Virus record (IMG/VR): IMGVR_UViG_3300032245_001860
Coordinates: 124,001-188,000 of that record
Reading direction: 5' to 3' (one strand)
Length of the DNA: 64,000 nucleotides
The notes below the pieces were generated by a model. It saw only the letters and a list, made by a program, of their open reading frames with translations. It did no database searches and had not been told where the DNA came from. A program made the position numbers and the translations under genes. Each line of letters starts with the position of its first letter. The first letter of the stretch is position 1. Shown one piece after another: positions 1,507 to 59,848 of the stretch.

Positions 1507-1531
1507 AGGAAATTGAGCCTTTTTTTTAGAA
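1507..1531 (+). promoter_or_regulatory. Putative phage late promoter AGG-N17-TAGAA
   Basis: AGG 1507-1509 and TAGAA 1527-1531. The same spacing recurs upstream of other structural genes. Confidence 0.55.
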
Positions 1532-1596
1532 GGTTTTAATAAACCCCGACTATGTATTTAGGGTGCTGTTTGAAATCTTGAGGAGAAAAAATAATT

Positions 1597-2604
1597 ATGG
1601 CTGATAGAATTTTCCCAAACAGATATCAAGAGGAACCTCTTGATTCTGACTTGGTCTACCAAGCAATTAACTGGGATAACTTTAACACCAAACTCGCAGA
1701 AGTTCAAAATGGTGTCAACGTACCAGAACTTCCAGCTGAGTTCAAAGAAGTTCTTGCTAAAAAGAAATCTGAAGACATGCCAGAAGAAGTTGAAGAAATG
1801 TTCAAAAACAAGAACAAAAGAGATGATGCAGATGCTGATGATCTTTCTGATGTTCCTGAGCAACTTCGTGAATTTGTAAAGAAGAAGCAAGACAAATCTA
1901 AGGGCAAGAAGTCCGAAGTAAAAGATGAAGAAGTCAAACCAGTTGAAACTGAAGAAGCTGGTTGGAAAAATGGCAAAAATATGAAGAAAGCTAATACTTT
2001 AGTTTTCAATCATCCTTCACAATTGTCAGCAGAAGCAGTAGAAGCTGCTATTGCAGAAGGTAATCAAGAATTAGCAAATGCTATTCTTGCTGCAAGACAT
2101 GAAAGAAGAGTCAGATTAGCTGGCAAGATTGAAACAAGAATTGCAGAAGAAACTGATAGATCTGTCAAGCTTGCGCAAAGAAGAGCTTACAGAGAAAATT
2201 TAGTTAAGATGGCAGCACAAGAAACTAAGAGTGTCAAGACTGCTAATACTGCCAAGAAGACTGAAACAGCAACAGAAGATGGTTTTGTTAAGGTTTCTAA
2301 TCTTGACAATTCTGCTAAGAAAGCTTTCGCATCTAAGGCCATTGCACAAGGTTTCCCAAAAGAATATGTTGATGCTATTTTAGGTGAATCACAGCCAGTT
2401 GTTGACAATACATCAGAAATCAGAAATGTCATGGCATCTGAATTATCTGAGAATGTAAAGAAAGCAGCTGTTTCTTCAATGGTCAAAGTTGCAACCCTTA
2501 CAGACGCTGATTATTCCAGAATTATTGATTACTGGAAGAATGAGCTTGGTTATGGCGATCAAGAGTGGATCGACGCACTCTTTACCAAAAAGTACGATAA
2601 GTAA
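1597..2604 (+). CDS. Head-associated/scaffold-like protein
   Basis: SD GAGGAG; 335 aa, charged and helical; three short P-x-x-hydrophobic-...-KK repeats; C-terminal DYWKNELGYG motif. Confidence 0.6.
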   Translation: MADRIFPNRYQEEPLDSDLVYQAINWDNFNTKLAEVQNGVNVPELPAEFKEVLAKKKSEDMPEEVEEMFKNKNKRDDADADDLSDVPEQLREFVKKKQDKSKGKKSEVKDEEVKPVETEEAGWKNGKNMKKANTLVFNHPSQLSAEAVEAAIAEGNQELANAILAARHERRVRLAGKIETRIAEETDRSVKLAQRRAYRENLVKMAAQETKSVKTANTAKKTETATEDGFVKVSNLDNSAKKAFASKAIAQGFPKEYVDAILGESQPVVDNTSEIRNVMASELSENVKKAAVSSMVKVATLTDADYSRIIDYWKNELGYGDQEWIDALFTKKYDK

Positions 2605-2618
2605 TTCCTCAAGATTAA

Positions 2619-2647
2619 TATCCCAGGAGGTTTATCCTCCTGGGATA
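2619..2647. terminator. Intergenic 12-bp perfect hairpin (terminator or RNA-processing site)
   Basis: TATCCCAGGAGG-TTTAT-CCTCCTGGGATA; no clear U-tract on the + strand. Confidence 0.55.
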
Positions 2648-2681
2648 AAATTGTAGGAAATAAATATCCAGGGAAATAAAA

Positions 2682-3497
2682 ATGAGTAAATTCAGAAGAG
2701 TACAAGAAACCGAAAACATACCAAATTTTATCACTAATAAATTTGTTGGTGCTTCTGTTGATATCGAAGAAGATCCGTATGCTGAACTTAAGAAAAATTC
2801 AACAGAAAATAGAATTAAGATTTCTAAACAACAAATTGGTATGACTAAGGAAGCTGCAAGTGTAAACAAACCTTGGGAAAAGATCTCTGGTGCATCAATG
2901 TACGATGATCTTCGCCCACAATCATTTGAAGAAAGACTTGCAAATCTTGAAGTTGGAGCTATCAGAAGATCTGATTATGCTTATGACGATGGTGATAATA
3001 CCAGAACTACAACAAGTGGCCTTAAAGCATTTTCAAGTGAAGATTATATGAATGCTATGCTATCAAGATCAGCTTCTATTTTTAATCCAGATATGATTGC
3101 AATATCTGAAGAATTTCTCAGTAGTCAAGAAACAACATCATCTCAAGCAGTTTTAGAACAATCTACAAGAAGAGAAGCAAAAGCATCAAAACATCAAGCT
3201 TGGGAAGAAAAGAATTTAGGAACTCTTAGACAATCTAAAGTTGTCACATCAAGAGCAAATTCAATCTTAAGAACTTCTGCTGAATCAGAATACAATTCTC
3301 AATTTGGAATGATCGACCCAAGTCAATTAGATCAAAGAGAATCAATGAGAGTTGCTAATCAAGAAAAGATTAGAGAACAAAGATTAGCTATTAAGAAAAA
3401 CTTTGATGAAGAAATTTTAAGAAATTCTCAACAAAGACCAAAGACATTATCAGAAATTTACAACAGCATTAATTTGGATTTTGAAGATTTAGATTAA
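2682..3497 (+). CDS. Hypothetical head-region protein
   Basis: 271-aa ORF, SD GGGA, tightly packed with the next gene. Confidence 0.65.
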   Translation: MSKFRRVQETENIPNFITNKFVGASVDIEEDPYAELKKNSTENRIKISKQQIGMTKEAASVNKPWEKISGASMYDDLRPQSFEERLANLEVGAIRRSDYAYDDGDNTRTTTSGLKAFSSEDYMNAMLSRSASIFNPDMIAISEEFLSSQETTSSQAVLEQSTRREAKASKHQAWEEKNLGTLRQSKVVTSRANSILRTSAESEYNSQFGMIDPSQLDQRESMRVANQEKIREQRLAIKKNFDEEILRNSQQRPKTLSEIYNSINLDFEDLD

Positions 3498-3498
3498 T

Positions 3499-4407
3499 AT
3501 GGAAAAGTTATCAAATATGCCAATTGGATCTAATCCAGCTACAGCACCTGAAGGAGCAATTAATAATCAATTGAATGCGCCAGCTGCTGGAATAACTCCT
3601 AAACAACTAAAAGATTTCTTGAACAAGCTTATCAGATACGGTAATAGGCCACCTAAAGAACTTTTAGAAGAATTAGGCAATTTGTCAACTTCAGATAAAA
3701 TTAAAAGCGACAAAATCAAAGATGAATTAAGAAAAATTGGCAATGCTTACACTCATGGTGGTATTGAAACAAAAGACCCATTAAGTGGAAAAAAAGATCC
3801 TACTGGCCACACATTAGCCAAAAGATTATTAGAAAAATTGCCAGGTTTAAGTCAAACCAATCAACATCAAAGATCTATAGAGGGAACAAACGTGTACAAC
3901 AACAGAATTGCACAAACTGTCAAAAAGAAGAAAAAGACAAGAGGAAATCCTTTCAGAGTTTTAATGGGTAAAGTTGGAAAATTGCTTGACCATGGTGTTG
4001 AAAAAAATGACATAGTTCGTTATCTTGCTAAATTGAAATATTGGAACAATGAAACTATAGAAAGAGCAGTAGATATTGTCAGAGATTATAATAAAAAGAA
4101 AAAGAAAGATACTGACAAATTCAAAGAAACAACCGAAAAAGAGGCTTCATCAAACACAAGAACTGTCGTAGCTGCCCTGGATTATGACAGAGAACCTGAT
4201 TTTCACAAAAAGTCAACAGGTGAACTTATTTACAGAGCTTGTTTCTTATTAGATGTTTTAGAAACTGACAAAGAAACTGTTCAACCATTAGATAAACCTA
4301 CTGTTGGCAAAAAAGAAGCCAAGGCAGAATTAGCACTTGTTAAAAAGGCACTTGTTGATAGAGGTTTAGATCAAGAAGAACTTTTACTTTTGGGTATAGG
4401 AAAATAA
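3499..4407 (+). CDS. Hypothetical head-region protein
   Basis: 302-aa ORF with basic patches, 1-nt gaps to neighbouring genes. Confidence 0.65.
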   Translation: MEKLSNMPIGSNPATAPEGAINNQLNAPAAGITPKQLKDFLNKLIRYGNRPPKELLEELGNLSTSDKIKSDKIKDELRKIGNAYTHGGIETKDPLSGKKDPTGHTLAKRLLEKLPGLSQTNQHQRSIEGTNVYNNRIAQTVKKKKKTRGNPFRVLMGKVGKLLDHGVEKNDIVRYLAKLKYWNNETIERAVDIVRDYNKKKKKDTDKFKETTEKEASSNTRTVVAALDYDREPDFHKKSTGELIYRACFLLDVLETDKETVQPLDKPTVGKKEAKAELALVKKALVDRGLDQEELLLLGIGK

Positions 4408-4408
4408 A

Positions 4409-6049
4409 ATGAGCGATAAATACAAAGTAAAAATACATACTCATAATCCAGAAGTTGCAGAAAAATTAGTTAATGGAACTGGCTTATTTCACATGCTCCA
4501 TGACACCATTGCTGGTCTTGGAAAACAATTAAATGAAAAAAGATTTATGCCAGCAGATTCCCCATTTTTTGCACTTACAAAATCTGATTTTGATATAGAT
4601 GACCCAATAGTTTCAAAGTTTTTTGACAATGGTGGTTTAGATAATGCTGTCAAAATTATCAAACTTCAACCCTCAGAAGCACATGGAAAAATGGTTGAGT
4701 GTTACAATGATCTTTACTCTTTCAGAACCGCTTTTGTAGCTAACAATTTACGTAAAGCCTATAATGCTTTACAAAATGCTATTGATTCTACTAATGATGC
4801 AGTTAGATTGGAAAGAATAGCAAATAAAGTTCAACAAAAATCTTCAGGTTATTGGCAAATTGAATCCTTAAATGCAATTGATGAAAGTTTAAAATTAGCA
4901 AATAGTTCTGAAACTAAAACATTAACATATGCCAGAGATTTAGTTTTATCTGGTGACAAAGACTTTTTTACAACTGCTTCAAAATTAGTAAAAAGTATTT
5001 TTGCTGAAGCATATCCAAAGGCTAATACAAGAGTCGCTTACACAACCTTAAGCACACAAGATAATGAACCTTTCTTAATGTGTCCAAAGGGCATTTATCA
5101 AGGCAAACATACTGTACCTATGGAAATCAGCAAATGTAGAGAAAACTGCATTGATTCAAGGGTAAGTAAAGACGGTGTAGTAACTTGTGCTTATCAAGAT
5201 TGGTTGAAAGTTGCATTCGAACCACATGATAAAGTTATGGCAAGATTATACGTCCATAGACATCCTGACAATGATGAAAATCCAATGGAAATTGCTGAGG
5301 GCGAAAGAGGTCATAAACTCAAGGATACAGATTTTGGATATGAAGCAAGATTTGATCATTCTGACCGTGGAGCTAATAAGTTAAGAGGAAAACAAAATCT
5401 TACAGAATCAAGAGAAAAACAACTTGATGATCTCAAATCCACTTCTTATGGTCATACTCGTGAAGATGAACCAAGAAAGAGACCTAAGCAAGCTCAAACT
5501 AATTCTACAAAAGTTATTGAAGATCAATTGCCAAGAAAACAACAAAAAGGTGATCATTTCTTAGAAGCTTTGCTAAATAAACTTAATAGAACAGAATCTG
5601 TTACTGATGAAGTTAGAGAAACTCAATTAGATGATAAGGGTCTTTACAATCACAGAGGCGAGATGGAAGAATCTTACCCTGTTCAATTAGAAAACAGAAA
5701 ACAAGAAAATGTAGATTATAAGGCTGAATTGAACAAAGATTTTGACGAGCCTGAAGAATCTGTTGCTCATTTGTTGAACAAGACTGCAAATAAGAAAGAT
5801 ACCACTCTTAATGGTGAACTTGATGAATCAAGAAGATACATCAAGACAGATGACACAAAAGAAATGCAGTTGAAAGAAAGAAGAACTATCAAGAAAGATG
5901 CTGATATTGATAAAAATATTGAATCTCTTTTAGACGAAGATGATGATTACCATCAATTTTCTGATGAAGACCTAAAGCATTTTGCTCATGAATTAGGGTT
6001 GGACAGCTATCTTGAAGATTCAAGAACTGACAACGATATAGAGTCTTAA
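4409..6049 (+). CDS. Head-region protein with a Cys cluster and repeated E-x-Q-L motifs
   Basis: 546 aa; CPKG...CRENC...CAY cluster; C-terminal repeats REKQLDD, IEDQLPR, RETQLDD, PVQLENR, EMQLKER. Confidence 0.65.
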   Translation: MSDKYKVKIHTHNPEVAEKLVNGTGLFHMLHDTIAGLGKQLNEKRFMPADSPFFALTKSDFDIDDPIVSKFFDNGGLDNAVKIIKLQPSEAHGKMVECYNDLYSFRTAFVANNLRKAYNALQNAIDSTNDAVRLERIANKVQQKSSGYWQIESLNAIDESLKLANSSETKTLTYARDLVLSGDKDFFTTASKLVKSIFAEAYPKANTRVAYTTLSTQDNEPFLMCPKGIYQGKHTVPMEISKCRENCIDSRVSKDGVVTCAYQDWLKVAFEPHDKVMARLYVHRHPDNDENPMEIAEGERGHKLKDTDFGYEARFDHSDRGANKLRGKQNLTESREKQLDDLKSTSYGHTREDEPRKRPKQAQTNSTKVIEDQLPRKQQKGDHFLEALLNKLNRTESVTDEVRETQLDDKGLYNHRGEMEESYPVQLENRKQENVDYKAELNKDFDEPEESVAHLLNKTANKKDTTLNGELDESRRYIKTDDTKEMQLKERRTIKKDADIDKNIESLLDEDDDYHQFSDEDLKHFAHELGLDSYLEDSRTDNDIES

Positions 6050-6050
6050 T

Positions 6051-6566
6051 ATGTGGTACAGAAAAGTTTTAGCATCATTGCCTGGACTATCTAATGCAGC
6101 AGGGCAAAATAAATCAATTTTAGATCAAGAAATTCAAGGCTTAAATGTTAGTGCAGAGCAATTATATCCTGAGCTTGAAGAAATGCTCAAAGAAATGAAT
6201 TTTGAACCTAAAGAATATGAAAAACTTCCTGATCATGCCAGAAGAAATATTTGGGATATCATAGTTCATAAGTACGACACTAATCTATATAACAATTTTG
6301 AAGATTCTGATACTCCAGGATTTGATGCTACTGAAGCAAGAAGACATTCACCTTACCATAGCAATCCATCTGAAACACCTATTGAAGAGCAGTTGGAAGC
6401 TACAAGACATGAAACTGTTGACCGTGAGCCAAACAATATGCTTCAAGCAGAAAAAGGCAATGGCGGTATGACTATGTTCAACGGAAAAGGTGTTTCACAG
6501 TATGCTTCTGGTAAGGGTGCAAGAATGTTCTATGACAATCTCCCTTCTAATCAGACATTGGTATAA
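6051..6566 (+). CDS. Hypothetical protein with an MWYRKVLA leader
   Basis: 171 aa, immediately upstream of the portal; contains IEEQLEATR. Confidence 0.65.
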   Translation: MWYRKVLASLPGLSNAAGQNKSILDQEIQGLNVSAEQLYPELEEMLKEMNFEPKEYEKLPDHARRNIWDIIVHKYDTNLYNNFEDSDTPGFDATEARRHSPYHSNPSETPIEEQLEATRHETVDREPNNMLQAEKGNGGMTMFNGKGVSQYASGKGARMFYDNLPSNQTLV

Positions 6567-6567
6567 T
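6559..6567 (+). promoter_or_regulatory. Extended -10 promoter (TGnTATAAT), probably giving a leaderless portal mRNA
   Basis: TGGTATAAT ends 7 nt before ATG 6575; no SD sequence present. Confidence 0.45.
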
Positions 6568-6574
6568 ATATGTT

Positions 6575-8917
6575 ATGGCAACAAGAAACTCATTGGCATC
6601 AGCAATCAGAACATCAGCATATTCTGTCACTGGTGAATCTGCAAAAGGGTCTGGATTCAATCAAGATCGAAACTATGCAAACAGTAGAATAAATCCTGGT
6701 TTGGGACCGAGTGTCAGACAGGCTCAGTCTATGAACACTGTAACCACTTCTCCAAACTTTTATTCTCCGTTCCTTACCCCTTCATCATTTCAAATCCCAA
6801 ATGCACGAAGAGAAGTTTATCTTTGGGCTAACTGGTGGGTAAATAATGAGCCGAAAGTTGCTGCAGCCATTAACTTCTACACAAACTTTCCATTTTCAGG
6901 TTGGGAATTAGAATGTTCTTCTACATATGTAAAAGACTATTTTGAAAAACTTGTTGAAAAGTTAAACTTCCAAAAATGGCTTCCTCAAATTGCGCACACC
7001 TATTATCTTTTAGGTGATTCTTTTGTTCTTTTATCAATTGAATGCGAGCACTGTAATGGTAGCGGTTGGAATGAAAAGAAGAACGAAGACTGTACTCATG
7101 ATGGTGCGTCTTGGAAATCTATTTCTATCTTAAATCCTGACAGTGTGTTAAAAACCCCAGGAATGCTTGATCAAGAAGGCACTTATGTTTACAGACCAAG
7201 TGCAGAAGAAATTAGAGTTGTCAATGAAAGACAACCTAAAGAAATTTATGACTCAATTCCTGATAGTGTAAAAAGAATGATTTTGAAGGGTGATCCAATC
7301 AAGCTCAATCCTTTATCGATTCACCACTTTAAGCATGGATCAAATCCTTGGGAAGATTATGGAACGTCATTGATCAGACCATTATTTCCTATTCTCACAT
7401 ATAAGGATAAATTGCGTCAAGCTCAGTTTATGATTGCTGATAGATTAATTCTTCCTATCAAAGTTGTCAAAATTGGTTCTGATACTCGCCCAGCATCACA
7501 AGAAGATATTGATGGCGTACAAGATGAACTTGCTGCACTTGCTTCTGATCCTAACCTGACCCTCGTAACCCACCATAACTTTGACCTTGAATGGTATGGT
7601 GCAAATAGTAAGTTCTATGTTGTTACTCCAGAATTTGAAGAAATTAATTCAGAACTTTTAGATGGCTTGATGCTTTCTAAGGCTTTACTTAATGGTGAAG
7701 GACCAACTTATGGAAATGCACAAGTTGGCCTTATGGCAATGGCTCAAAGATTAGAGACATTCAGAAGAGAAGTAGCTCACTGGATTGAATTGAAAATATT
7801 TAGACCAGTTGCTGAGTGGAATGGATTTGTTGTTGAGGGAGAAAGAGGACAAGAAGAGATTATCTACCCAACAATAAAGTTTAATGATTTGCAACTAAGA
7901 GATGATTCGCAAAAACTTCAGATTATGGCTACTGCAAATCAACAAGGTGTTATTTCAAACACTTCGCTAATTGAAGCTTTTGGACTTGATGTTGACCAAG
8001 AAATTGAAAGACTAAGATTTGAACAAGGCGCAAGTTTTATGAAAGAAGGAAACTTTGGTGTTCCAAGTTTCTCTATGAACTTGCAATCAGGACCCGTCAC
8101 TGGGCAGGGTTTTGCAGGTCAACAAGCAGCTCCAGGCGCAGCTCCTCCTGGTGGAATGATGGGTGGAATGCCTGGGATGGAAGCTGGTGGAATGACACCC
8201 CCTATTGCATCATCAAAAGAAGAAAACTATCGTTTAGCATCTATTGTTATTAATCAACTTTACAATGACGCATTAGAAACAAAGAAAGAGCTTTATGGCA
8301 AAAGATATGCCTCAAAAACAATAAAGTCTGCTGCGCATGAAGGATTTATCCAATCAATTATGCCTGTCACTGGTAGAGGTATCCATGGTCCACTTCCTGA
8401 GAAATATGAAGGATTCAATAAAACATTAAGTCCTGAAATTCTTGGTGGTAGTCTTTGCTCTCCATTAAATATTGAAGCTAAATTCGAATATAGACTTGCA
8501 ATGAGTTCAAATGATGAAAATGTAAGAACAGCTTTCAAGCAAAAACAAGAAATGAATCAGCCAAGCTTATATACATCTATTGAAAAGAAACTTTATGGAT
8601 TGTTACTTTCATTAAACATGCCTTATTCTTTATTTGCTCAATACTCTGCAGGACCAACAGGTGATTACACTTTGGATGCAGCTATTCCACAATTGGGCAT
8701 TGGAATAGAAGCTGACGGAGAAATCTGGCATAATAATTTTGACAAGATTGCTAAAGATAAAAAAAGAGATAGTGAATTAGCAAACAATGGATGGATTATC
8801 TTAAGGTTCACAGACAAAGAATTAAATGATCATCCAAATGATGTCTTGAATGTAATTATGCAAGGTATTAGAAAAAGAACAGGACAATCTAATAGCCCAG
8901 AAGAACAAACATTATAA
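6575..8917 (+). CDS. Portal protein with a C-terminal DUF559/Vsr-like endonuclease domain
   Basis: Portal-like segments (EPKVAAAINFYTNFPF, IHHFKH...YGTSLIRP, LSKALLNGEGPTYGNAQV, RREVAHWIELKIFRPVAEWNGF) and position before protease/scaffold/MCP. C-terminus: SIEKKL...AQY...YTLDAAIP..GIGIEADGEIWH...DKKRD..L..NGWIILRF. Confidence 0.85.
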   Translation: MATRNSLASAIRTSAYSVTGESAKGSGFNQDRNYANSRINPGLGPSVRQAQSMNTVTTSPNFYSPFLTPSSFQIPNARREVYLWANWWVNNEPKVAAAINFYTNFPFSGWELECSSTYVKDYFEKLVEKLNFQKWLPQIAHTYYLLGDSFVLLSIECEHCNGSGWNEKKNEDCTHDGASWKSISILNPDSVLKTPGMLDQEGTYVYRPSAEEIRVVNERQPKEIYDSIPDSVKRMILKGDPIKLNPLSIHHFKHGSNPWEDYGTSLIRPLFPILTYKDKLRQAQFMIADRLILPIKVVKIGSDTRPASQEDIDGVQDELAALASDPNLTLVTHHNFDLEWYGANSKFYVVTPEFEEINSELLDGLMLSKALLNGEGPTYGNAQVGLMAMAQRLETFRREVAHWIELKIFRPVAEWNGFVVEGERGQEEIIYPTIKFNDLQLRDDSQKLQIMATANQQGVISNTSLIEAFGLDVDQEIERLRFEQGASFMKEGNFGVPSFSMNLQSGPVTGQGFAGQQAAPGAAPPGGMMGGMPGMEAGGMTPPIASSKEENYRLASIVINQLYNDALETKKELYGKRYASKTIKSAAHEGFIQSIMPVTGRGIHGPLPEKYEGFNKTLSPEILGGSLCSPLNIEAKFEYRLAMSSNDENVRTAFKQKQEMNQPSLYTSIEKKLYGLLLSLNMPYSLFAQYSAGPTGDYTLDAAIPQLGIGIEADGEIWHNNFDKIAKDKKRDSELANNGWIILRFTDKELNDHPNDVLNVIMQGIRKRTGQSNSPEEQTL

Positions 8918-8949
8918 GTAGAAATACTTTATAAATTTAGTATATTCGA

Positions 8950-8980
8950 AAAACCCGTCGAATCCGACGGGTTTTGTTTT
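8950..8980 (+). terminator. Rho-independent terminator, potentially bidirectional
   Basis: AAAACCCGTCG-AATC-CGACGGGTTTT followed by GTTTT. Confidence 0.8.
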
Positions 8981-8982
8981 GT

Positions 8983-9007
8983 AGGTTTTTAAGGCTTTAA
9001 TGCAGAA
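8983..9007 (+). promoter_or_regulatory. Putative late promoter AGG-N17-CAGAA
   Basis: Directly after the terminator and upstream of the protease gene. Confidence 0.55.
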
Positions 9008-9071
9008 CTATTTTTATTAGCCTCCATCCATTTATAAGGTGGATATGGATTGAAAAGTAAGGAAAAGTGTA

Positions 9072-12000
9072 ATGAAAAAGGTTGCAAAAGGTGGAGCAAT
9101 TACTATCAATAGTTTCTTAAATGAAGGTGATAGAAATGTAGCCAGAAATCACATGCTAAAGACAGCCTCCTCAAATATGAGAGAAGCTGCAAAAATTGGT
9201 TTGCAATCATTATATGCTGATCCGAAAGAAGTTTTAGAAAAATACAAAGATTTTGATATTGTTAAAGAAATGCAAGCTCGTAAAGGAGCTAAATTACTTT
9301 GGGTTAGAGCCAGAGCAATAGATGCAGATACTGTCAATGCAAATGGTGACTATTTTTCAAAAGAAGAACTTCTCAAGGAACATGAAATTAAGGGTGAAAA
9401 AATCCCTTCATATAAAACTTTTGAAGGCGTTCCAATTTACACTAACCACAAAAATGATGATATAGAACAAGCTAAAGGAATGGTTGTCTATGCAGAATGG
9501 GACGATAAAGAAAACTGTGTTTATTGTACCTTCTTTGTAGATGAAGAAGCTTATCCTGACATCGCAAGAAATATTAGAACTGGAGTAATTCATGATGTTT
9601 CTATGGGATGTTCTGTTGACTATGGTATTTGTTCAAAGTGTAAAAATAAAGCTTACACTGAAAAAGATTATTGTGAATGTTTGAAAAAATTTAAAGGCAA
9701 GACAGATCCTCAAAGTGGCAAAAAAGTTTATGAAGAAAACTACAAGTTGAAATTTATTGAACTTTCTTGTGTAGGTGATGGTGCTTTTGAAACTTGTGAA
9801 ATTCAAGAAATCTATGATGTAGATGATGTTTTAAGTGCTGCTGAAGATTTAGAAAAGAAAGCCAATGAAATATGTTCAAATATTGTTTTGGCTTTTGATG
9901 GTGCTCCTTCAAACCCAGCTGATAGATTGGCATATGAAAACTGTTTAAGAACCGCTCAATTTGCTTCTAAGACAGCAATAAAACTTGCTCAAAACGCTGG
10001 TACTTTAGTGGGTGGTCCTCTATTAGCCGGACCTGGTGCAAATCAAAATTCTACTGTATCAGCAGTTCTACAAGGTTTAGGTATTGATCCAAGATCAGCG
10101 CTTAATGTTTTAGACTTGATCAACTTATCACTTAACTTTCTTGAAGTTGGTGTTATGAATTTGTTTGCAAGAAAAGATAATGTTGACCTTACTCACGTTG
10201 GCAAGATTACTAAAGCAATGGCTGATTTACAGGGCACCATGCAAGATATGATTGATGATGGTGTTGATGTAGGATCTGGACAAAGACCACAACCAATCAA
10301 TGCAGGACAACAAACACAACAAGCTGTCGCACCTGCTCAAAATCCAACTAATGCTAATGTTGGATTAGCAAACTACACTAATACTGGAAATGTTGGGAGA
10401 ATTATGGATTTTTCAAATCCAATTGAGTCTAATCCAGTAGGTGGGGGTGTAGCCTTAGCAAGTTCAAATATTAATTTAGTTTGGGCTTCAAGAGATGGTA
10501 AAAGAGAAGTATTTGCCAGTACAAATAATAATGTTAGAGAACCATCAAGCAAAGTTTTAAGACTTACGGAAAATTTATTATCTTTAAAGAATGCACTTAA
10601 TGATAGTGAAATTCAAAAGAGAGTAGAAACAGTCATTAGAGTTTCTAATGAGAGAAATAAAAACATAAAAACTAATGCGCCTATTTTGGCGGAGGGCAGA
10701 AATCAAATGGATCATTTTGCAAAAATCGCATCAGAGCAAAGAAAAAAACTTGCTGCTGCTGTCACCATCGACTTTAAAGTTGAAGATGCTTCTGGCAATA
10801 GAGTTGTTTTATCTACTGATGGATCTATAACTGGATACACTGGTGGAAAAAGAACAGCTTGGGAACCTATTTTAACTGAAAATCAAATCAATATGATGGA
10901 AAGTGGTCAAGGTACAAGAGTTGCCGCTGAACTTTTAAATGAGTATGGTAAGTTTGTTAGAACTGCTTTGCTTGATGTTAAAGAAAGATTTGATGACAGA
11001 GAAAAGCAACTTGAAGAAGTAAGATCTGGAGAAGGCTACAATGGTAAATCCAGATACGATGCTATTTCTGAACAACATAAACCTGCTGCTAATGTTACAA
11101 GAGAAGAAGCTTTACAAGACAAGCAAACTGGCATGGGTGCTGATGATGTTAAAGAAAAATTGCTTGCTGACGCTGGACTTTATGGTAGAAAAGTTAAGGA
11201 TTTAGAAGTCAAGAAGTCTTTATTTACCTTAATTGATGAAGTAAATAAGGGTGTTCCAACTGAAGTTCTTGAAAAAAGATTGCAAGAATGTAGAGCGGAC
11301 GGCAAGGCTTCTGCTCATGAGATTATGACAGCAACAATAAATGCTTTGGGTAAAGCAGTTGTTGCTGCGATGGAAACTCCTAATACAATTATGAGAGTTG
11401 CACAAACTCTTGTAAATGAAGAAGCACTTCCTGAAATGGTTGGAACAGCTGCTGCTGCTGCACCAATGGATGAAGCAAATGCAGAAAAGGCAGAATTCTT
11501 TGGAACAGAAGAAGGCCCTATGGATTCTGTTACAGCAGTCCTTAAACAACTTGGAGCAGCTGTAAGTTCTGAAATCACTGCAAAAGATCTTTCTGATGCT
11601 TTGTCGGTTGCAGTTGAAGAAGGCGAAATCACAAAAGAAGGCGTTACAAGAATTGCTGAACTTTTGATGGCTGATGCTAATATTCCTGAAGAAGGGCTTG
11701 ATGTTGAAGCAACTCCATCAAAAAATGAAGAGCTTAAGCAAGCTTTGACAAGTGCAGTTGATTCTGATAAGAATTTAATTTCTAAAGAAGATCTTAAGTC
11801 CGCTATTTCTGCTATGGCAATGTCAACAGAAGAAGCTGGAGTTACACCAGACGAAGTTGTCGATACAGTTGACAGCATGCCTGAAAATCAACTTGTAGCT
11901 GCAATTAATAGAGCAAAAACTGCTTCAGCAACCGAAGCCAGATTGAGAGCAAGAGCAAGAAGAGAATTCTGGGGTGTCAAAATTGCCTCCACAAAAGATA

Positions 12001-13289
12001 TTAGCAATAATGTTATTGGCTGGCTTGCTGATTATTCTACAAACTTTGATATTTCTACCAAGAAAATTGCTTTAGCTGCTAAGAGACTTTGTGAAGATTA
12101 TGAAGTTGCTGAAAGATTGGTAGCGAAGGCCATTGAAACAAAAAATTCAATGGAAAAAACTGCTGGAATGAAGGTTACTCAAAACAAAACTGAATCTCTT
12201 ACTTTTGTTTGTACTGCAGAAGATTTAGATGGTATTTCTCCATCAGACGAAGGCTTTGAAGAATCATTCAAACAAAAGGCTATTTCTGTTCTCCAAGGTC
12301 ATGGATTTACTGTTGATCCAGGGACATTTACATTTACAGATTTGAATGTAAGTAGTACCGGAGATATTACAGCAAGAGTTTCAACAAATGTTACTAAATC
12401 TTTTGATGTTGATGAATCAACTGAAATGGATGCAGAATCACCTGTAGATGAATCTATTGAAGGGACTGTTGAAGGTCCTGTTCAAAATGGCGAAATTGTC
12501 ATGACAGATGCTGCAAGAGTTGCAAGAAGAGAAAGAAGAGCACAACTTTTAGCAAGATATGCTCAAGTTCCTGGTATGGGTGCTGCACCTACTGGACCAG
12601 CCCCTGGTCCAGTAGATCCTAATCTTGGAATCGGAGCTGCACCTGCAGCAACTGATCCTGGTATTTTAGGTATGACTGGTGGAACTCCTGAAGGAGAAGA
12701 TGAAGACCCTATGGCATCAGGAGACACAGAACCAGGCGAAAAGAAACCTTGGGGAAGCATTTGTCCAGTTTGTGGATCTGATGATGTAAACATTTCAGAA
12801 TCTAATGCAGACTGTCAATCATGTGGAACAACTTACAAGATTCTTCAATCTATTGAACTTATTTCACTTGGTGAAAAGGGTAAGGATGGAGCTGCACCTG
12901 AAGAAGGTGGAGAAGATCTTATGGGTGGTTTAGGTGAAATGACTGCACCTGCAGAAACTCCTATGCCAGGTGCTGAAGCTGGAATGGGTGCTCCTGCAGC
13001 TCCTGCAGCTCCAGGTATGGCTCCTGTAGCTAACCTTAAATCAATGTTTAGATTAGCTGCAACTGTAGATTCTGATGTATATCTAAGAACAGCAATGCCA
13101 GACTTTGATAGAGCAACAGAGAAGAGATTGCCAGTAGGTATGATCTGTCCAAGTTGTGGTTCAAGAGAAGCACACAAAGTTAGTAATAATACCTTCTGCT
13201 ATGACTGTGGAAACTATTCAAAAACAACAGTTGCATCCAATAAGAAGAATCCTTCAAAACTTGATGTAACTATCACATGGATTGATTAA
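9072..13289 (+). CDS. Prohead maturation protease fused to a long scaffold/internal-head region with two C-terminal zinc ribbons
   Basis: N-terminal HK97/assemblin-type protease motifs NANGDYF, PIYTNH (His), DVSMGC (Ser), FIELSCVGDGA. Long acidic Ala-rich middle. CPVC..CQSC and CPSC..CYDC ribbons. Confidence 0.75.
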   Translation: MKKVAKGGAITINSFLNEGDRNVARNHMLKTASSNMREAAKIGLQSLYADPKEVLEKYKDFDIVKEMQARKGAKLLWVRARAIDADTVNANGDYFSKEELLKEHEIKGEKIPSYKTFEGVPIYTNHKNDDIEQAKGMVVYAEWDDKENCVYCTFFVDEEAYPDIARNIRTGVIHDVSMGCSVDYGICSKCKNKAYTEKDYCECLKKFKGKTDPQSGKKVYEENYKLKFIELSCVGDGAFETCEIQEIYDVDDVLSAAEDLEKKANEICSNIVLAFDGAPSNPADRLAYENCLRTAQFASKTAIKLAQNAGTLVGGPLLAGPGANQNSTVSAVLQGLGIDPRSALNVLDLINLSLNFLEVGVMNLFARKDNVDLTHVGKITKAMADLQGTMQDMIDDGVDVGSGQRPQPINAGQQTQQAVAPAQNPTNANVGLANYTNTGNVGRIMDFSNPIESNPVGGGVALASSNINLVWASRDGKREVFASTNNNVREPSSKVLRLTENLLSLKNALNDSEIQKRVETVIRVSNERNKNIKTNAPILAEGRNQMDHFAKIASEQRKKLAAAVTIDFKVEDASGNRVVLSTDGSITGYTGGKRTAWEPILTENQINMMESGQGTRVAAELLNEYGKFVRTALLDVKERFDDREKQLEEVRSGEGYNGKSRYDAISEQHKPAANVTREEALQDKQTGMGADDVKEKLLADAGLYGRKVKDLEVKKSLFTLIDEVNKGVPTEVLEKRLQECRADGKASAHEIMTATINALGKAVVAAMETPNTIMRVAQTLVNEEALPEMVGTAAAAAPMDEANAEKAEFFGTEEGPMDSVTAVLKQLGAAVSSEITAKDLSDALSVAVEEGEITKEGVTRIAELLMADANIPEEGLDVEATPSKNEELKQALTSAVDSDKNLISKEDLKSAISAMAMSTEEAGVTPDEVVDTVDSMPENQLVAAINRAKTASATEARLRARARREFWGVKIASTKDISNNVIGWLADYSTNFDISTKKIALAAKRLCEDYEVAERLVAKAIETKNSMEKTAGMKVTQNKTESLTFVCTAEDLDGISPSDEGFEESFKQKAISVLQGHGFTVDPGTFTFTDLNVSSTGDITARVSTNVTKSFDVDESTEMDAESPVDESIEGTVEGPVQNGEIVMTDAARVARRERRAQLLARYAQVPGMGAAPTGPAPGPVDPNLGIGAAPAATDPGILGMTGGTPEGEDEDPMASGDTEPGEKKPWGSICPVCGSDDVNISESNADCQSCGTTYKILQSIELISLGEKGKDGAAPEEGGEDLMGGLGEMTAPAETPMPGAEAGMGAPAAPAAPGMAPVANLKSMFRLAATVDSDVYLRTAMPDFDRATEKRLPVGMICPSCGSREAHKVSNNTFCYDCGNYSKTTVASNKKNPSKLDVTITWID

Positions 13290-13293
13290 ATGC

Positions 13294-13330
13294 AATAAGA
13301 TTAGGGAGATTTGTTCTCCCTAATCTTATT
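13294..13330. terminator. 16-bp perfect hairpin (terminator or processing site)
   Basis: AATAAGATTAGGGAGA-TTTGT-TCTCCCTAATCTTATT. Confidence 0.7.
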
Positions 13331-13336
13331 TAATGC

Positions 13337-13361
13337 AGGTTTAAAAAATAAATTTGTAGAA
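13337..13361 (+). promoter_or_regulatory. Putative late promoter AGG-N17-TAGAA
   Basis: Follows the hairpin; upstream of the scaffold-decoration-MCP operon. Confidence 0.6.
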
Positions 13362-13420
13362 TAAAAAAGAAGTTTCTTGATATACAAGAATTTTGTATTT
13401 TATAAGGGAAGCAGCGAATA

Positions 13421-15022: not shown

Positions 15023-15051
15023 TCCTCACAAAATTTTAGGAGAAATATAAA

Positions 15052-15723
15052 ATGGCTATTCGTGCTTTAAACTCAGTAGTTGTCGCTAACTACGATACAA
15101 CTTCAACCGCTACATGGTCAGCAGGTGTAGGTCTTCAAAGATCCGCAACAGCTGGACAAGTTGCTCTTGCTCAAAGAGCTTATGGTGCTGGTGGAGGTGT
15201 AGGATTTACTGGTGGATTTGCAGGATTCTCTGCAGATGATACTGCAAGATCTGGTAATACCATGATCCTTGCTGACCCAGTAGGTGCATCTTATGTCGAT
15301 GCTTCAGGCGTTCTTCAAGCTAACAACAACGGTTTCTATGTTGTTTCAAAGAGAGCTATTGGCGACTTCCAAGCTGAAAACGTCAATGGATTAACAAACC
15401 CAACTGCTGGTTCCTCAGGTTATGAAGGTCCAAGAAGAGGCGTTGGAGTTTTCAATACACCAGGTGGACAATTTATTACTGACCAATTCAAGGCAGGAGC
15501 TGGTTCATCAACTTCCTTAGGTAACGCAGACACTGGTACTGCAACTTATGTCCCTGGTGCATTACTTACAATTGCTGCTGATGGTTCAGGAAAGATTGTC
15601 GAACTTGCTGGTACAGCTGTTGGTGTTGCGAACGTCTCTGGTGCAGGTATTACAATGCCAGTTGTTGGTGTTGTTGACCGCTATGACTCAGCTGCTGGTC
15701 TTCTTTACTTTACACAAAAGTAA
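15052..15723 (+). CDS. Head decoration/cement protein (putative)
   Basis: Gly/Ala/Thr-rich beta-type 223-aa protein, strong SD, highly biased codons, directly before the MCP. Confidence 0.6.
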   Translation: MAIRALNSVVVANYDTTSTATWSAGVGLQRSATAGQVALAQRAYGAGGGVGFTGGFAGFSADDTARSGNTMILADPVGASYVDASGVLQANNNGFYVVSKRAIGDFQAENVNGLTNPTAGSSGYEGPRRGVGVFNTPGGQFITDQFKAGAGSSTSLGNADTGTATYVPGALLTIAADGSGKIVELAGTAVGVANVSGAGITMPVVGVVDRYDSAAGLLYFTQK

Positions 15724-15756
15724 TAACTTAGGACTTATTTAAGGAGAAAAATTAAA

Positions 15757-16611: not shown

Positions 16612-16628
16612 TTTTATATTAGTCAAAC

Positions 16629-16663
16629 AAAAAAAGACCCTTCTTCGGAAGGGTCTTTTTTTT
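16629..16663. terminator. Bidirectional Rho-independent terminator with a cUUCGg tetraloop
   Basis: A7-GACCCTTC-TTCG-GAAGGGTC-T8. Confidence 0.9.
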
Positions 16664-16681
16664 GTCTATTTATTCTTATTG

Positions 16682-16710: not shown

Positions 16711-16717
16711 AAAAAAA

Positions 16718-19572: not shown

Positions 19573-19575
19573 AGC

Positions 19576-39393: not shown

Positions 39394-39418
39394 TTCTAAA
39401 TATTCAGCCTGTAATCCT
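39394..39418 (-). promoter_or_regulatory. Putative late promoter AGG-N17-TAGAA (minus strand) for the neck/tail operon
   Basis: Plus strand shows TTCTA 39394-39398 and CCT 39416-39418; ATG lies 10 nt downstream. Confidence 0.55.
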
Positions 39419-42920: not shown

Positions 42921-42985
42921 TTTGAAGCTAACCTTAAAGGTATTTGTACAATAATTTATGAAATTGTTTTCATAAGGAGATTATT

Positions 42986-58100: not shown

Positions 58101-58897
58101 GATTTGATAAAGGTGCTGTTACAAATGGTGGGTTTGCTCAAAATACAGTCGGAGTAGGAACAGCAACAACAAACACAACCTCTCAAAAAACTGCAAATTC
58201 ATTATCTTACTTAAGTTCCTACAGTTCTGTATATTCAGGAACTGCTTCTACATCTTATGGATTACCTGTTACAACCTTAATTTCATCTTCAACAAATGAT
58301 TTCAACGCAGATAATATAGTTCCAACTCCTGATGTTTTAGATCCAGTAGGTGATGTTGGAAATGTTTCTGTAGATTTATTTGAGGGTCCAATACATTTTG
58401 CAAATATTTACAATCCAATTTCTGTCCATTATTCGAACAGTAAAATTATAATTGCTCAGCCTTTTAGTGATTCTGTTTTAGCTTTTAATGATGATTCTTC
58501 TTTATCATTGGCATGGAAGATATCAAGTGATGTAGCAGAGTTTATAGACACTAAGCTTGGATCTGTTTATGAATTATCCGACGGTGTTGTCATATTAGGT
58601 TGTCCAATCACAGATAACAATGCGACAGGTAGATTGATAAAATACAGAGTCTCTGGTGGAATTATTGAAACAAAACTATTATTCAATAATCTTGATGTAA
58701 TAAAAGCTTTACCTGGGCCTGATCAAGATAATTTTTATGTTCTTTTAGATGATTCTGTCAATAATGGCACAAACACAAGATTGAAGTTAGTTGATATTTC
58801 TGGAAATATTATTTCTGTTTGGGGTGAAAATTATGAAATTATCCACCCTAAAGGATTGAGATTACTTTCTAATAATGACATTTTGGTATCTGAATAA
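55196..58897 (+). CDS. Virion structural protein with a C-terminal beta-propeller/NHL-like region
   Basis: TPFYNLGYLEP N-terminus; SDTLNDRVV, IIIAQPFSDSV, HPKGLRLL repeats. Confidence 0.55.
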   Translation: MGNTPFYNLGYLEPSQDLSKNLDLDEKRFKTIDTQLYAVYQIFRNGIIEDSNNNVSWQVETYADTNKFLKVSVTSGKGHVAYKAAETTASKDVTLPVIPLDATEVKIWIYAVENLNTPVTKDVDFIASLLRIDDIDNYVNVGGVVVNVSANTISVFTDERQIITIFSSLSSSLTNHKHIGGSVNPAPINLQDHVINKLSGEYIDNLNLDKVTTGKLDAARLPQIDHNTLTNKGTLTHTQIDSLLTQYLEQDSTYKLADLSIANRLQTLVALKKQSGFEYIDKTQINTIVYVPGIWPNTLANTSTGTTSNFSDRNVPGALIGATILDSAPWSSGLGISGSTSDSVFSDVRTYATRRDFETAKTYNQDQSIGFFENITIVGDNLDDSAGYFTISNPLNFSAIEQPVTNIFNEASGWNRAINTTSNYSGGTVSVDTRLYSYKLFDNPIPMNEVSKVGIGFSVGLGTTSSKIGQIYMYLVLGSDDNDPQFANDIAVTFDSGQYFPTTGPSKLYLSSTDGSEIGYKIFDDSTDSASIGSSVYKIVSLENLWPAQNRTSVKGLGFYWSSLKGWNPEKSINFYLNTPSDDQVNPYPYNYDTLQTARKSSATNSTASMFLWNDSLYAGTGKFLFRFDSGLNNTIYNLVQWTSSKPSGTTYSLTTRTDINNTVFDDLANIDDSTELAYGYLASTSSQGRYLDVLVTLNSDSTKAYAPEFDLLKIYYSTVGTGNTKTYNARFSNFSTAQTGWETEQYYAKNIGFGSTYFEDNRLKNTMKISSTNSIGNWIFLRNNSAISAYTSQTEVIYEDGIDIANLSTYLSPVQIYNKSLDRGFSSPKDFQALANGSNLYSDTLNDRVVMFDLDGNITRIIQGNLRLKQSNRDFVVLGAYFNPTIRKIWVAFSQNISTTTPFDPTKIYIDYDSISVRLDDTRIDQNNTGLFDLVSNTSSTLEITFKNNDLGIALSAAISSARIKRIRFDKGAVTNGGFAQNTVGVGTATTNTTSQKTANSLSYLSSYSSVYSGTASTSYGLPVTTLISSSTNDFNADNIVPTPDVLDPVGDVGNVSVDLFEGPIHFANIYNPISVHYSNSKIIIAQPFSDSVLAFNDDSSLSLAWKISSDVAEFIDTKLGSVYELSDGVVILGCPITDNNATGRLIKYRVSGGIIETKLLFNNLDVIKALPGPDQDNFYVLLDDSVNNGTNTRLKLVDISGNIISVWGENYEIIHPKGLRLLSNNDILVSE

Positions 58898-58898
58898 A

Positions 58899-59822
58899 AT
58901 GATAACACTTATAAATGAAAAGAGTAAAACAATACATGTAAACAAAACTTTAGATATAAGTTTTGTTTCTAAAAATATTTCTTTTGAAGAATCCAAAATA
59001 ACAATAGATGATGTTTTTCAAATAAATCTTTTACCCGAAGATGACACTTTATTTTTTAATTTTGATAATACTAACAATTTAAAAAATTCATTTTTGTTGA
59101 ATTTTAATTATGATATTTTGGTAGAAGTAAAGTTTAATAGTGTTTTGTTTGCAAAAGATGATTACAATTATTATGTCACTTCAGATAATTGCCTTTTTGA
59201 AGTAGATAATGAAGGAATTGTTATAGTAAGAATAAATGATAAAAGTTCATCAATAAAATTGTCTTATTATAATCATCATAAAAAACAAGATAGTTTCAAA
59301 ACATTAAGTTATGCTGCAAATGCCACGTTTATAACTGAAAATGATTATGTTCCAGAGTTTTCCATAGCAACATTTGATGATAGTAACTTTGCAATATCAA
59401 GACCTATAAGACAAGGTGTTCCAATTATTTCAACTGTTCCATCTTTTATTGACGGCAACTCTTCTGCAGCCGATGTTTCATTTTTCAATACTGGTAAAGG
59501 CAATTATTACAAAACTATTTATTTTAGAATCATTTGCAACAAAATAATGGAAAATATTTCTCCAAATGATTTGTCTGAATTGAAGTTGAAAATATATATG
59601 CCAAATGGATTAGATACTGTAAAAACTGCCATTTACAATGATATGTATTTAGTGTCTAATGATTCGACAAATAACTATTCAATATACAGATCAAGTTTTA
59701 ATTTCTATATCCAAGGCAATTATGACGGAATTGACTATGTTGATGGGTACATGTATACAGATGTCCATGTTCCCTTAACTGTACAAACAATTATGCCTAT
59801 TGAGATTGATTTCAGTCTCTAA
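58899..59822 (+). CDS. Hypothetical protein (probable start 58899)
   Basis: ATG 1 nt after the upstream stop; very AT-rich. Confidence 0.55.
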   Translation: MITLINEKSKTIHVNKTLDISFVSKNISFEESKITIDDVFQINLLPEDDTLFFNFDNTNNLKNSFLLNFNYDILVEVKFNSVLFAKDDYNYYVTSDNCLFEVDNEGIVIVRINDKSSSIKLSYYNHHKKQDSFKTLSYAANATFITENDYVPEFSIATFDDSNFAISRPIRQGVPIISTVPSFIDGNSSAADVSFFNTGKGNYYKTIYFRIICNKIMENISPNDLSELKLKIYMPNGLDTVKTAIYNDMYLVSNDSTNNYSIYRSSFNFYIQGNYDGIDYVDGYMYTDVHVPLTVQTIMPIEIDFSL

Positions 59823-59823
59823 T

Positions 59824-59848
59824 AGGTCTATTTTCTGTCAAATAAGAA
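59824..59848 (+). promoter_or_regulatory. Putative late promoter variant AGG-N17-AAGAA
   Basis: Intergenic, same spacing as the other copies. Confidence 0.45.

What the first reader, a model, noticed from the sequence alone, without database searches (positions are those of the whole stretch)
1507..59848. Conserved bipartite motif AGG-N17-xAGAA upstream of structural operons: candidate phage late promoter
Seen with identical spacing in intergenic DNA: 1507-1531 (TAGAA), 8983-9007 (CAGAA), 13337-13361 (TAGAA), minus strand 39418-39394 (TAGAA) and 59824-59848 (AAGAA), with a looser copy at 42938-42962 (ATGAA). Two copies sit right behind terminator hairpins. A rough hand estimate expects only a few chance hits across the whole window, almost all in coding DNA, so the positional clustering is the signal. 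Inference: these are -35/-10 elements for a phage-encoded alternative sigma factor or RNA polymerase not present in this window.
Basis: partly seen in the sequence, partly recalled or inferred. Interest (0 to 1): 0.62.

Follow-up and report, generated by a model that had tools for sequence, protein, structure and literature searches.

The report
Late promoters of a jumbo phage
The AGG-N18-AGAA motif is a real, conserved two-block promoter in front of the head and other virion gene clusters of an uncultivated freshwater jumbo phage. It is most likely read by the host RNA polymerase carrying a phage-encoded sigma factor that resembles bacterial SigH. This is a clean but ordinary kind of phage gene control.

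Summary
All six sites exist as described. The motif is not enriched over the whole window (11 hits vs 10.6 expected). It is enriched in intergenic DNA: 5 vs 0.35 expected in the window, 9 vs 2.2 in the 316-kb genome. Only the N18 spacing is enriched. An exhaustive scan of spaced word pairs in an independent relative ranks AGG-N18-AGAA first. A motif sampler run without prior on 42 diverged orthologous upstream regions recovers R(C/A)AGG(T/A)-N16-(T)AGAA. All six sites are conserved in relatives whose spacers have diverged. Three sites form terminator-promoter-operon units around the protease and capsid genes.

No phage RNA polymerase was detected. Three sigma-70-family genes lie outside the window. 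One is conserved in all five large relatives examined and consistently scores best against SigH models. Published SigH promoters (-35 AGGA, -10 GAAT, 17-18 nt spacer) match this motif's blocks and spacing.

No transcription start has been mapped, and the assignment to the SigH-like sigma rather than the second conserved sigma is inferred. This is a new member of a known kind, of moderate interest.

The parts
1507..1531 (+). Promoter copy AGGAAATTGAGCCTTTTTTTTAGAA, 65 nt upstream of gene 1597-2604 (function unknown).
   Evidence: Exact match. Both blocks are conserved in relatives L091-L105 with 45-50% protein identity and a different distance to the ATG. The G002 orthologue also carries the motif. 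PWM built from relatives only: 14.3 bits.
8950..8975 (+). Intrinsic terminator hairpin after the portal gene (6575-8917), directly upstream of the next promoter.
   Evidence: Found by the terminator scan. Fold -17.4 kcal/mol, z -4.1. The hairpin is conserved in relatives.
8983..9007 (+). Promoter copy AGGTTTTTAAGGCTTTAATGCAGAA, 64 nt upstream of the 1405-aa prohead-protease fusion gene (9072-13289).
   Evidence: Recovered without prior by the motif sampler in 22 non-redundant orthologous regions. The downstream gene matches head maturation protease phrog_18299.
13294..13330 (+). Strong terminator hairpin (16-bp stem) after the protease gene.
   Evidence: Fold -23.2 kcal/mol, z -7.2.
13337..13361 (+). 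Best promoter copy, gcAGGTTTAAAAAATAAATTTGTAGAAt, 59 nt upstream of operon 13421-15022, 15052-15723 and the major capsid gene 15757-16611.
   Evidence: Top hit of the genome-wide scan with the PWM built from relatives only (24.1 bits). Conserved in 20 non-redundant relatives. RNA-library contig depth is about 0 in 13167-13363 and rises from 13364 on, which is weak evidence.
16627..16665 (+). Terminator closing the capsid operon.
   Evidence: -21.1 kcal/mol, z -6.0. RNA contig depth drops to 0 after 16713.
39394..39418 (-). Promoter copy AGGATTACAGGCTGAATATTTAGAA, starting four bases after the stop codon of the upstream gene. It lies 10 nt before the ATG of gene 38682-39383, the first of a long minus-strand cluster. 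The mRNA may be nearly leaderless.
   Evidence: L107 keeps both blocks with a changed spacer. L108 has AGG-N18-AGTA. The G002 orthologue has the motif at the same 10-nt distance. PWM 17.3 bits.
42938..42962 (+). Variant copy AGGTATTTGTACAATAATTTATGAA (TGAA in place of AGAA), 23 nt upstream of gene 42986-43168 and the following large genes.
   Evidence: The whole 29-nt element, spacer included, is conserved in L115-L117, whose downstream protein is only 24-66% identical. The conserved spacer contains the palindrome TTGTACAA, which suggests an additional binding site.
59824..59848 (+). Promoter copy tAGGTCTATTTTCTGTCAAATAAGAAt, 36 nt upstream of the 1323-aa gene 59885-63856.
   Evidence: TAGGT-N17-nGAAT is conserved in L110-L113 down to 35% protein identity, with diverged spacers. 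PWM score below 9 bits because of the T before AGG.

Best explanation
The motif is the late (virion-gene) promoter class of a roughly 316-kb jumbo phage that has no RNA polymerase of its own.

Host core RNA polymerase is redirected by a phage-encoded sigma-70-family factor. That factor contacts R(C/A)AGG(T/A) as the -35 element and (T)AGAA as the -10 element, which lies in the same register as TATAAT: T-12, A-11, G-10, A-9, A-8. Eighteen bases separate AGG from AGAA.

Transcription should start about 7-8 nt after GAA. It runs through one operon and stops at a hairpin terminator that abuts the next promoter.

The most likely reader is the conserved SigH-like sigma encoded at genome 110929-111624, 13 kb upstream of the window, next to the clamp-loader gene in a replication-type neighbourhood. 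This gives a cascade: host-sigma early promoters, then the phage sigma, then virion genes.

Shown: the motif, its spacing, position, orientation and conservation; the sigma genes; no detectable polymerase gene.

Inferred: promoter activity, the start site, late timing, and which sigma reads it.
For: - Intergenic enrichment: 5 vs 0.35 expected in the window and 9 vs 2.2 in the genome.
- Enrichment only at N18, in two genomes.
- Top-ranked spaced word pair in an unbiased scan.
- A motif sampler run without prior recovers it in 42 non-redundant orthologous upstream regions.
- All six sites are conserved while their spacers drift.
- Six orthologous gene pairs in G000 and G002 carry it upstream in both genomes.
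- Terminator-promoter-operon layout.
- Downstream genes include the protease, the capsid operon and a gene with a minor-tail-protein match.
- No beta, beta' or T7-like polymerase; three sigma genes.
- The 231-aa sigma scores 117 bits (E 9e-34) on SigH models. The next specific family scores about 31 bits.
- Its orthologues are present in 5 of 5 large relatives at 33-76% identity. The two most divergent ones, rescanned, also score best on SigH at about 111-113 bits.
- Its region 4.2 helix, K-x-V-DNALTRIRKK, equals that of a Bacillota SigH that passes the NCBIfam cut-off.
- SigH promoters are -35 AGGA and -10 GAAT with a 17-18 nt spacer (PMC12456013).
- C. difficile SigH promoters read AAAGGA...GTAGAAT, which equals AGG-N17/18-AGAA (PMC7438776 Table 3).
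Against: - No transcription start is mapped.
- The only RNA data are metatranscriptome contigs of close relatives. One low-depth contig begins at 13320, upstream of the predicted start.
- The sigma scores below the NCBIfam SigH cut-offs (117 vs 208-295 bits), so it is SigH-like and not a SigH equivalog.
- The base after GAA is G more often than T, and the fourth base of the -35 block is T more often than A. The motif is not identical to AGGA/GAAT.
- A second sigma (187 aa) is equally conserved and adjacent.
- The region 4.2 comparison is partly circular, because the cellular sequences were retrieved with that peptide pattern.
- The host is unknown and the samples are freshwater. SigH is a Bacillota family.
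- The genome is estimated 88% complete, so a divergent polymerase could have been missed.
Confidence: 0.7

Rival explanations
1. The motif is a promoter, but it is read by the second conserved phage sigma (187 aa, genome 114792-115355, generic sigma-70/ECF-like). The SigH-like factor would then serve another gene class.
For: This sigma is present in 5 of 5 relatives at 41-59% identity. It always lies 3-4 kb from the SigH-like gene. No experiment links either sigma to the motif.
Against: It has no affinity to any family with an AGG/GAA-type promoter. As I recall, ECF-type promoters usually carry AAC in the -35 block and CGT in the -10 block, and neither is seen here. The SigH-like factor gives a specific match in both blocks and in spacing.
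Confidence: 0.14
2. A host sigma reads the sites. Either the host's own SigH-type factor does so, or the host primary sigma uses the TATAAT-like TAGAA block while a phage activator bound at cAGGt replaces the -35 contact, as in T4 MotA/AsiA sigma appropriation.
For: TAGAA lies in the TATAAT register, with T-12 and A-11 kept. Relaxed copies AGGT-N17-TATAAT occur in other intergenic regions. Early genes clearly use host-type TTGACA-N17-TGnTATAAT promoters.
Against: T-7, essential for primary sigma factors (established knowledge), is not conserved. G is the most common base there. The phage carries a conserved sigma whose family matches the motif. No MotA/AsiA-like gene was looked for.
Confidence: 0.1
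3. The motif is not a promoter. It would be a binding site for a DNA-binding regulator or packaging/replication protein, or an RNA element in the transcripts.
For: Site 42938 is conserved through its whole spacer, including a palindrome. In some relatives the motif is flanked by an inverted repeat.
Against: At the other sites only two short blocks at fixed spacing are conserved and the spacer is free. The position is always between a terminator or stop codon and the next gene, and the orientation follows that gene. No Rfam family matches. The region around site 1507 folds no better than shuffles (z -1.7).
Confidence: 0.05
4. The sites are chance matches of a low-complexity pattern in AT-rich DNA.
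For: The whole-window count equals the shuffle expectation, 11 vs 10.6. The pattern was defined after looking at these sites.
Against: Independent replication in G002: 21 vs 4.0 expected, top-ranked word pair, and only the N18 spacing enriched. The sites are also conserved at orthologous positions.
Confidence: 0.01

Closest known systems
SigH (sigma-H) dependent promoters of Bacillota (B. subtilis, C. difficile, Sporomusa)
   Same: -35 AGGA and -10 GAAT with a 17-18 nt spacer (PMC12456013). C. difficile examples read AAAGG(A/T)-N-GTAGAAT, which equals AGG-N17/18-AGAA (PMC7438776). An R two bases before AGG is also seen here; I recall it from the B. subtilis consensus RnAGGAwWW. The phage sigma's best family is SigH.
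   Different: The spacing is strictly N18 here, whereas most of the C. difficile examples read here use N17. The fourth base of the -35 block is T more often than A. The T of GAAT is not conserved, and G is preferred. The sigma is below the SigH equivalog cut-offs. The setting is a lytic-type jumbo phage from freshwater, not the sporulation or transition-state regulon of a Bacillota cell.
Bacillus phage SPO1 middle and late promoters read by phage sigmas gp28 and gp33/34
   Same: The same strategy: early genes use the host sigma A, then phage-encoded sigma factors on host core polymerase read new -35/-10 pairs (PMC13401047 abstract). From memory, the SPO1 middle -35 is AGGAGA.
   Different: From memory only, not tested: SPO1 middle -10 is TTTnTTT and SPO1 late is CGTTAGA/GATATT, which differ from AGAA. 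No homology of these sigmas to gp28 or gp34 was tested here.
Group 2 jumbo phages (no RNA polymerase, phage-encoded sigma factors; Iyer et al. 2021, PMC7824862)
   Same: No polymerase gene and several sigma factors, so host core polymerase is presumably recruited.
   Different: Group 2 is defined by a gp23-type capsid, T4 gp33 and a T4-like late system. Here the capsid matches phrog_2522 and the portal is Mu-like. The late promoter is bipartite, not the single -10 box TATAAATA of T4.
Phage-encoded sporulation-like sigma factors (Schwartz et al. 2022, PMC9429907)
   Same: Phage genomes carrying homologues of Bacillota alternative sigma factors.
   Different: In that survey, sporulation-like sigmas occurred only in phages of Bacillota, and the text does not mention SigH. 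The factor here is SigH-like. It comes from freshwater samples, and a relative is embedded in an Armatimonadota MAG contig.

Membership tests
SigH-type promoter | -35 element AGGA | tested here: met
   AGG is invariant. The fourth base is T or A in almost all of the 42 sampled sites and in all six window sites. T is more common than the canonical A.
SigH-type promoter | -10 element GAAT | tested here: inconclusive
   GAA is nearly invariant in the near clade. The following base is G, then C, A or T, and T occurs at only 2 of the 6 window sites. The distant clade uses ATAA or TTAA.
SigH-type promoter | 17-18 nt between AGGA and GAAT | tested here: met
   AGG-N18-AGAA equals AGGw-N18-GAA. Only this spacing is enriched. 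The range comes from PMC12456013.
SigH-type promoter | Transcription depends on a SigH-family sigma and starts about 7 nt after the -10 block | not testable with these tools
   Only assembled metatranscriptome contigs were available, and contigs cannot show starts.
SigH sigma factor (NCBIfam TIGR02859 / NF006148 equivalogs) | Score at or above the curated cut-off (208-295 bits) | tested here: not met
   The score is 117 bits (E 9e-34). SigH is the best family, but the score is below the cut-off. The two most divergent phage orthologues score about 111-113 bits. The protein should therefore be called SigH-like, not SigH.
Sigma-70 family | Region 2 (PF04542) and region 4 (PF04545) present | tested here: met
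   In the 231-aa sigma, region 2 passes the cut-off at 34 bits. Region 4 is covered by the full-length SigH and sigma-70/ECF model matches, residues 10-214. The 191-aa sigma passes on both Pfam domains and the 187-aa sigma on region 4.
Canonical primary-sigma promoter (TTGACA-N17-TATAAT) | TTGACA-like -35 and conserved T at -7 | tested here: not met
   The consensus scan lists no sigma-70-type promoter at any of the motif sites it covered, window 1-17000. The aligned sites show cAGGt at -35 and no conserved T-7. True host-type promoters occur in the early region.
T4-type late promoter | Single -10 box TATAAATA without a -35 element | tested here: not met
   The aligned sites have a conserved upstream block at fixed spacing and TAGAA, not TATAAATA.
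Promoter of a phage-encoded RNA polymerase | A phage polymerase gene in the genome | tested here: not met
   PF00562 and PF00623 give no match while the controls respond. PF00940 gives no match, but its control did not respond either. Very divergent polymerases and the missing 12% of the genome cannot be excluded.

The most novel reading that the evidence does not exclude
A widespread clade of freshwater jumbo phages (300-480 kb) has taken over a SigH-type sigma factor together with its AGGA/GAAT promoter grammar to run its virion-gene programme. The SigH family is otherwise tied to the transition state, sporulation and competence in Bacillota. The hosts may lie outside Bacillota, because a syntenic relative sits in a 1.36-Mb contig of an Armatimonadota MAG. 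Sigma and promoter would co-evolve: the -10 block is AGAA in the near clade and ATAA/TTAA in the distant clade, where the sigma is only 37% identical, while the -35 block and the region 4.2 helix stay fixed.
Probability: 0.3. Interest if true: 0.55.

Novelty: new member of a known kind. Interest (0 to 1): 0.4.

Why it matters
The result gives a ready map of transcription units for the virion module of an uncultivated jumbo-phage clade with more than 150 related contigs in IMG/VR. It also gives a promoter-sigma pair that can be tested in vitro without culturing the phage.

If the SigH-like assignment holds, it extends phage use of Bacillota-type alternative sigma factors to SigH and to freshwater phages of unknown host. 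The orthogonal sigma/promoter pair could be useful for synthetic biology.

The principle itself, a phage sigma cascade with a class-specific bipartite promoter, has been textbook knowledge since SPO1 and T4.

Tried and rejected
- An alternative core, TTGTAG/ATGCAG, seemed to recur around sites 8983 and 13337. It is not enriched in intergenic DNA (5.2% of hits vs 5.8% of the genome), so I dropped it.
- Plain k-mer enrichment of intergenic DNA only returned GC-rich terminator words.
- The first scan of spaced word pairs was swamped by the repeated early cassette. It worked only after repetitive intergenic regions were removed.
- The PWM scan of the whole genome is only about 2-fold above null, because the motif carries little information. 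Coding-region hits are mostly noise.
- A tblastn search of the phage collection with gene 13421 found nothing.
- The search for related loci found no relatives of gene 43172 and only one of gene 59885. The genome search on related records replaced it. One search was a frame slip, corrected.
- RNA evidence. Only Logan contigs of freshwater and riverine metatranscriptomes hold parts of the stretch, at 5-8% of sampled words. Laid on 5,901 bases, within the operators' 6,000-letter limit, they show depth rising after 13364 and ending at the terminator near 16665. They cannot show starts, and one contig begins at 13320. I treat this as compatible, not as proof.
- Britton 2002 and Saujet 2011 are not held in the library. 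The SigH consensus is cited from PMC12456013 and PMC7438776 instead.
- PHROG scans left most of the large window proteins unannotated. 'Structural operons' is therefore shown for the head module and is only suggested for the rest.
- The large protein searches, structure prediction and complex prediction were not used, because the claim does not depend on them.
Full report
**Context.** The window is bases 124001-188000 of a single 315,852-bp contig with 33% G+C. It is an IMG/VR virus record rated 88% complete. The window holds a Mu-like portal with a C-terminal nuclease-like domain (6575-8917). It also holds a 1405-aa protein with an N-terminal prohead-protease domain (9072-13289), the major capsid protein (15757-16611, phrog_2522, 5e-67) and many large unannotated proteins. 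One of these has a weak baseplate-hub match. The phage collection has no relative. IMG/VR holds 156 stretches that encode a relative of the capsid protein.

**The observation.**
- The pattern is not rare. It occurs 11 times in the window against 10.6 expected.
- The intergenic hits are not noise. The window's roughly 2 kb of intergenic DNA has 5 matches where dinucleotide shuffles give 0.35, and none of 300 shuffles reaches 5. The whole genome's intergenic DNA has 9 against 2.2 expected.
- None of the nine lies in the early region at 1-28 kb, although that region has dozens of intergenic spacers.
- A control that keeps composition and context intact is to vary the spacer. AGG-N(k)-AGAA in intergenic DNA peaks only at k=18 (9 vs 1-5 at other k).

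**Independent replication.** I fetched a related genome, G002 (358 kb; structural proteins about 45-70% identical).
- Its intergenic DNA has 21 matches against 4.0 expected (maximum 11 in 200 shuffles), again only at k=18.
- I ran an exhaustive scan of every 3-mer, N8-26 spacer and 4-mer combination (about 300,000 in all) on non-repetitive intergenic DNA. It ranks AGG-N18-AGAA first in G002 (11 vs 0.67 at other spacers, p about 2e-10). It also ranks first in the two genomes pooled (18 vs 1.78).
- This removes the concern that the pattern was defined after seeing the sites.

**Conservation.** The order portal, protease, g13421, g15052, capsid is conserved in 80 related loci.
- A Gibbs sampler with no prior information, run on 42 non-redundant upstream regions of the protease and g13421 orthologues, converged on R(C/A)AGG(T/A)-N16-(T)AGAA. 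The register is the same in essentially every sequence, while the spacers differ freely.
- Site 1507 is conserved in relatives at 45-50% identity with a different distance to the start codon.
- Site 39418 is kept in L107 and appears as AGG-N18-AGTA in L108.
- Site 59824 appears as TAGGT-N17-nGAAT down to 35% identity.
- Site 42938 is conserved over a full 29 nt, including the palindrome TTGTACAA.
- Six orthologous gene pairs in G000 and G002 carry the motif upstream in both genomes. One of them is a gene outside the window, at 75607-78198.

**Layout.**
- Portal gene, then hairpin 8950-8975, then promoter 8983-9007, then the protease gene.
- Hairpin 13294-13330, then promoter 13337-13361, then g13421, g15052 and the capsid gene, then hairpin 16627-16665.
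- The motif always points at the next gene, 10-65 nt from its start codon.
- No Rfam family and no tRNA lies in the window.

**What reads it.**
- The genome shows no RNA polymerase beta, beta' or T7-like gene. The T7-like search had no working control, and divergent enzymes could be missed.
- It has three sigma-70-family genes, none of them in the window.
- The 231-aa protein at 110929-111624 follows a clamp-loader gene. It scores 117 bits (E 9e-34) on the NCBIfam SigH models. The next specific family scores about 31 bits. The score is below the equivalog cut-offs, so the protein is SigH-like and not SigH.
- Orthologues exist in all five large relatives examined at 33-76% identity. The two most divergent ones, scanned separately, again score best on SigH.
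- The closest cellular sequences are one from an Armatimonadota MAG and SigH-type sigmas of Clostridia. One of them, from an unclassified Bacillota MAG, passes the SigH cut-off and has the same region 4.2 helix, DNALTRI(R/K)KK. That helix was also the retrieval pattern, so this point is partly circular.
- A second sigma (187 aa) is equally conserved and adjacent. The third is less conserved.

**The match to SigH promoters.**
- Sporomusa SigH promoters have -35 AGGA and -10 GAAT with 17-18 nt spacers, 'resembling B. subtilis and C. difficile' (PMC12456013).
- SigH-assigned promoters of genes down-regulated in a C. difficile sigH mutant read, for example, AAAGGAAAATATTCTTTTATGTAGAAT. This equals AGG-N17/18-AGAA (PMC7438776 Table 3).
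- The phage motif corresponds to the 18-nt spacing version.
- There are two differences. The fourth base of the -35 block is T more often than A, and the T of GAAT is not conserved.
- In TATAAT register the -10 block is T-12, A-11, G-10, A-9, A-8. The lack of a conserved T-7 argues against the host primary sigma.

**RNA.**
- Only assembled contigs of freshwater and riverine metatranscriptomes hold parts of the region.
- On 11000-16900, depth is near zero in 13167-13363. It rises from 13364, is highest over the capsid gene, and is zero beyond 16713.
- That pattern fits the proposed unit. However, contigs cannot show starts, intergenic DNA of relatives maps poorly, and one contig begins at 13320. 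I count this as compatible only.

**Verdict.** My best estimates are:
- about 0.85 that these are promoters of a phage-sigma class;
- about 0.7 for the full statement that names the SigH-like factor as the likely reader.

The kind of system is well known, so this is a new member of a known kind and of moderate interest.

Noticed in passing
outside the window: G000:C1:1000-27000: More than 25 copies of an early cassette. Each has a 24-nt palindrome (TGGGGTGATAATATTATCACCCCA, with variants), then AAATAA, then a host-type promoter TTGACA/TTGCA-N17-TGnTATAAT. The cassettes are often preceded by a terminator. tRNA-like sequence lies at 5.4-7 kb. The extended -10 box and strong GGAGG ribosome sites suggest a host with a canonical primary sigma.
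   Followed up: partly
L126, L160, L162 (G008:C5:136000-173300): A 1.36-Mb contig of an Armatimonadota MAG (JAFDWS010000002.1) contains a syntenic relative of this phage at 54% G+C. The capsid protein is 78% identical, and the portal-protease-capsid block is present. Clamp loader, sigma and the next gene are 62-73% identical to phage G006. It could be a giant prophage, an assembly chimera or a host clue. rpoB is on another contig.
   Followed up: partly
L038 and L162 (relatives): In the distant clade (sigma 37% identical) the -35 block TAGGT is kept, but the -10 block is CATAA or CTTAA instead of TAGAA. This may reflect co-evolution of sigma and promoter.
   Followed up: no
window 18397-19572 and 16385-20940: A RuBisCO large-chain-like protein (PF00016, 6e-33) sits just downstream of the capsid operon, next to a HAD-phosphatase/nucleotidyl-transferase fusion and a weak MobA-like nucleotidyl-transferase match (below cut-off). 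This is an unusual auxiliary gene set for a phage.
   Followed up: no
window 6575-8917: The portal protein carries a C-terminal DUF559 / restriction-endonuclease-like domain, residues 669-765.
   Followed up: no
window 40525-40610: About six tandem copies of a 14-nt unit (TTAAATTGTTAAT) lie in the spacer upstream, on the minus strand, of gene 40056-40460. This may be an array of protein-binding sites. There is no AGG-N18-AGAA motif here.
   Followed up: partly
window 42936-42964: The variant promoter is conserved through its entire spacer, AAGGTAyTTGTACAAnAnTTyTATGAAAT, including the palindrome TTGTACAA. This holds in relatives whose downstream protein is only 24-30% identical. It suggests an overlapping regulator site.
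   Followed up: partly
window 39383-39418 (minus strand): GAA lies only 10 nt from the ATG, with no Shine-Dalgarno sequence. The same 10-nt distance is kept in the G002 orthologue. A start 7-8 nt after GAA would give a nearly leaderless mRNA.
   Followed up: partly
relatives L032-L037, L046, L162 (upstream of the protease gene): The promoter is bracketed by an inverted repeat, TTTTTTGAAAA ... TTTTCAAAAAA, which is absent from the window's copy.
   Followed up: no
genome 47708, 65675, 250262, 303756, 304114, 308535; window 23653: Intergenic copies of AGGT-N17-(T)ATAAT or GTAA share the -35 block and spacing but have a TATAAT-like -10 block. They may be a second promoter class or weaker members of the same class.
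   Followed up: no
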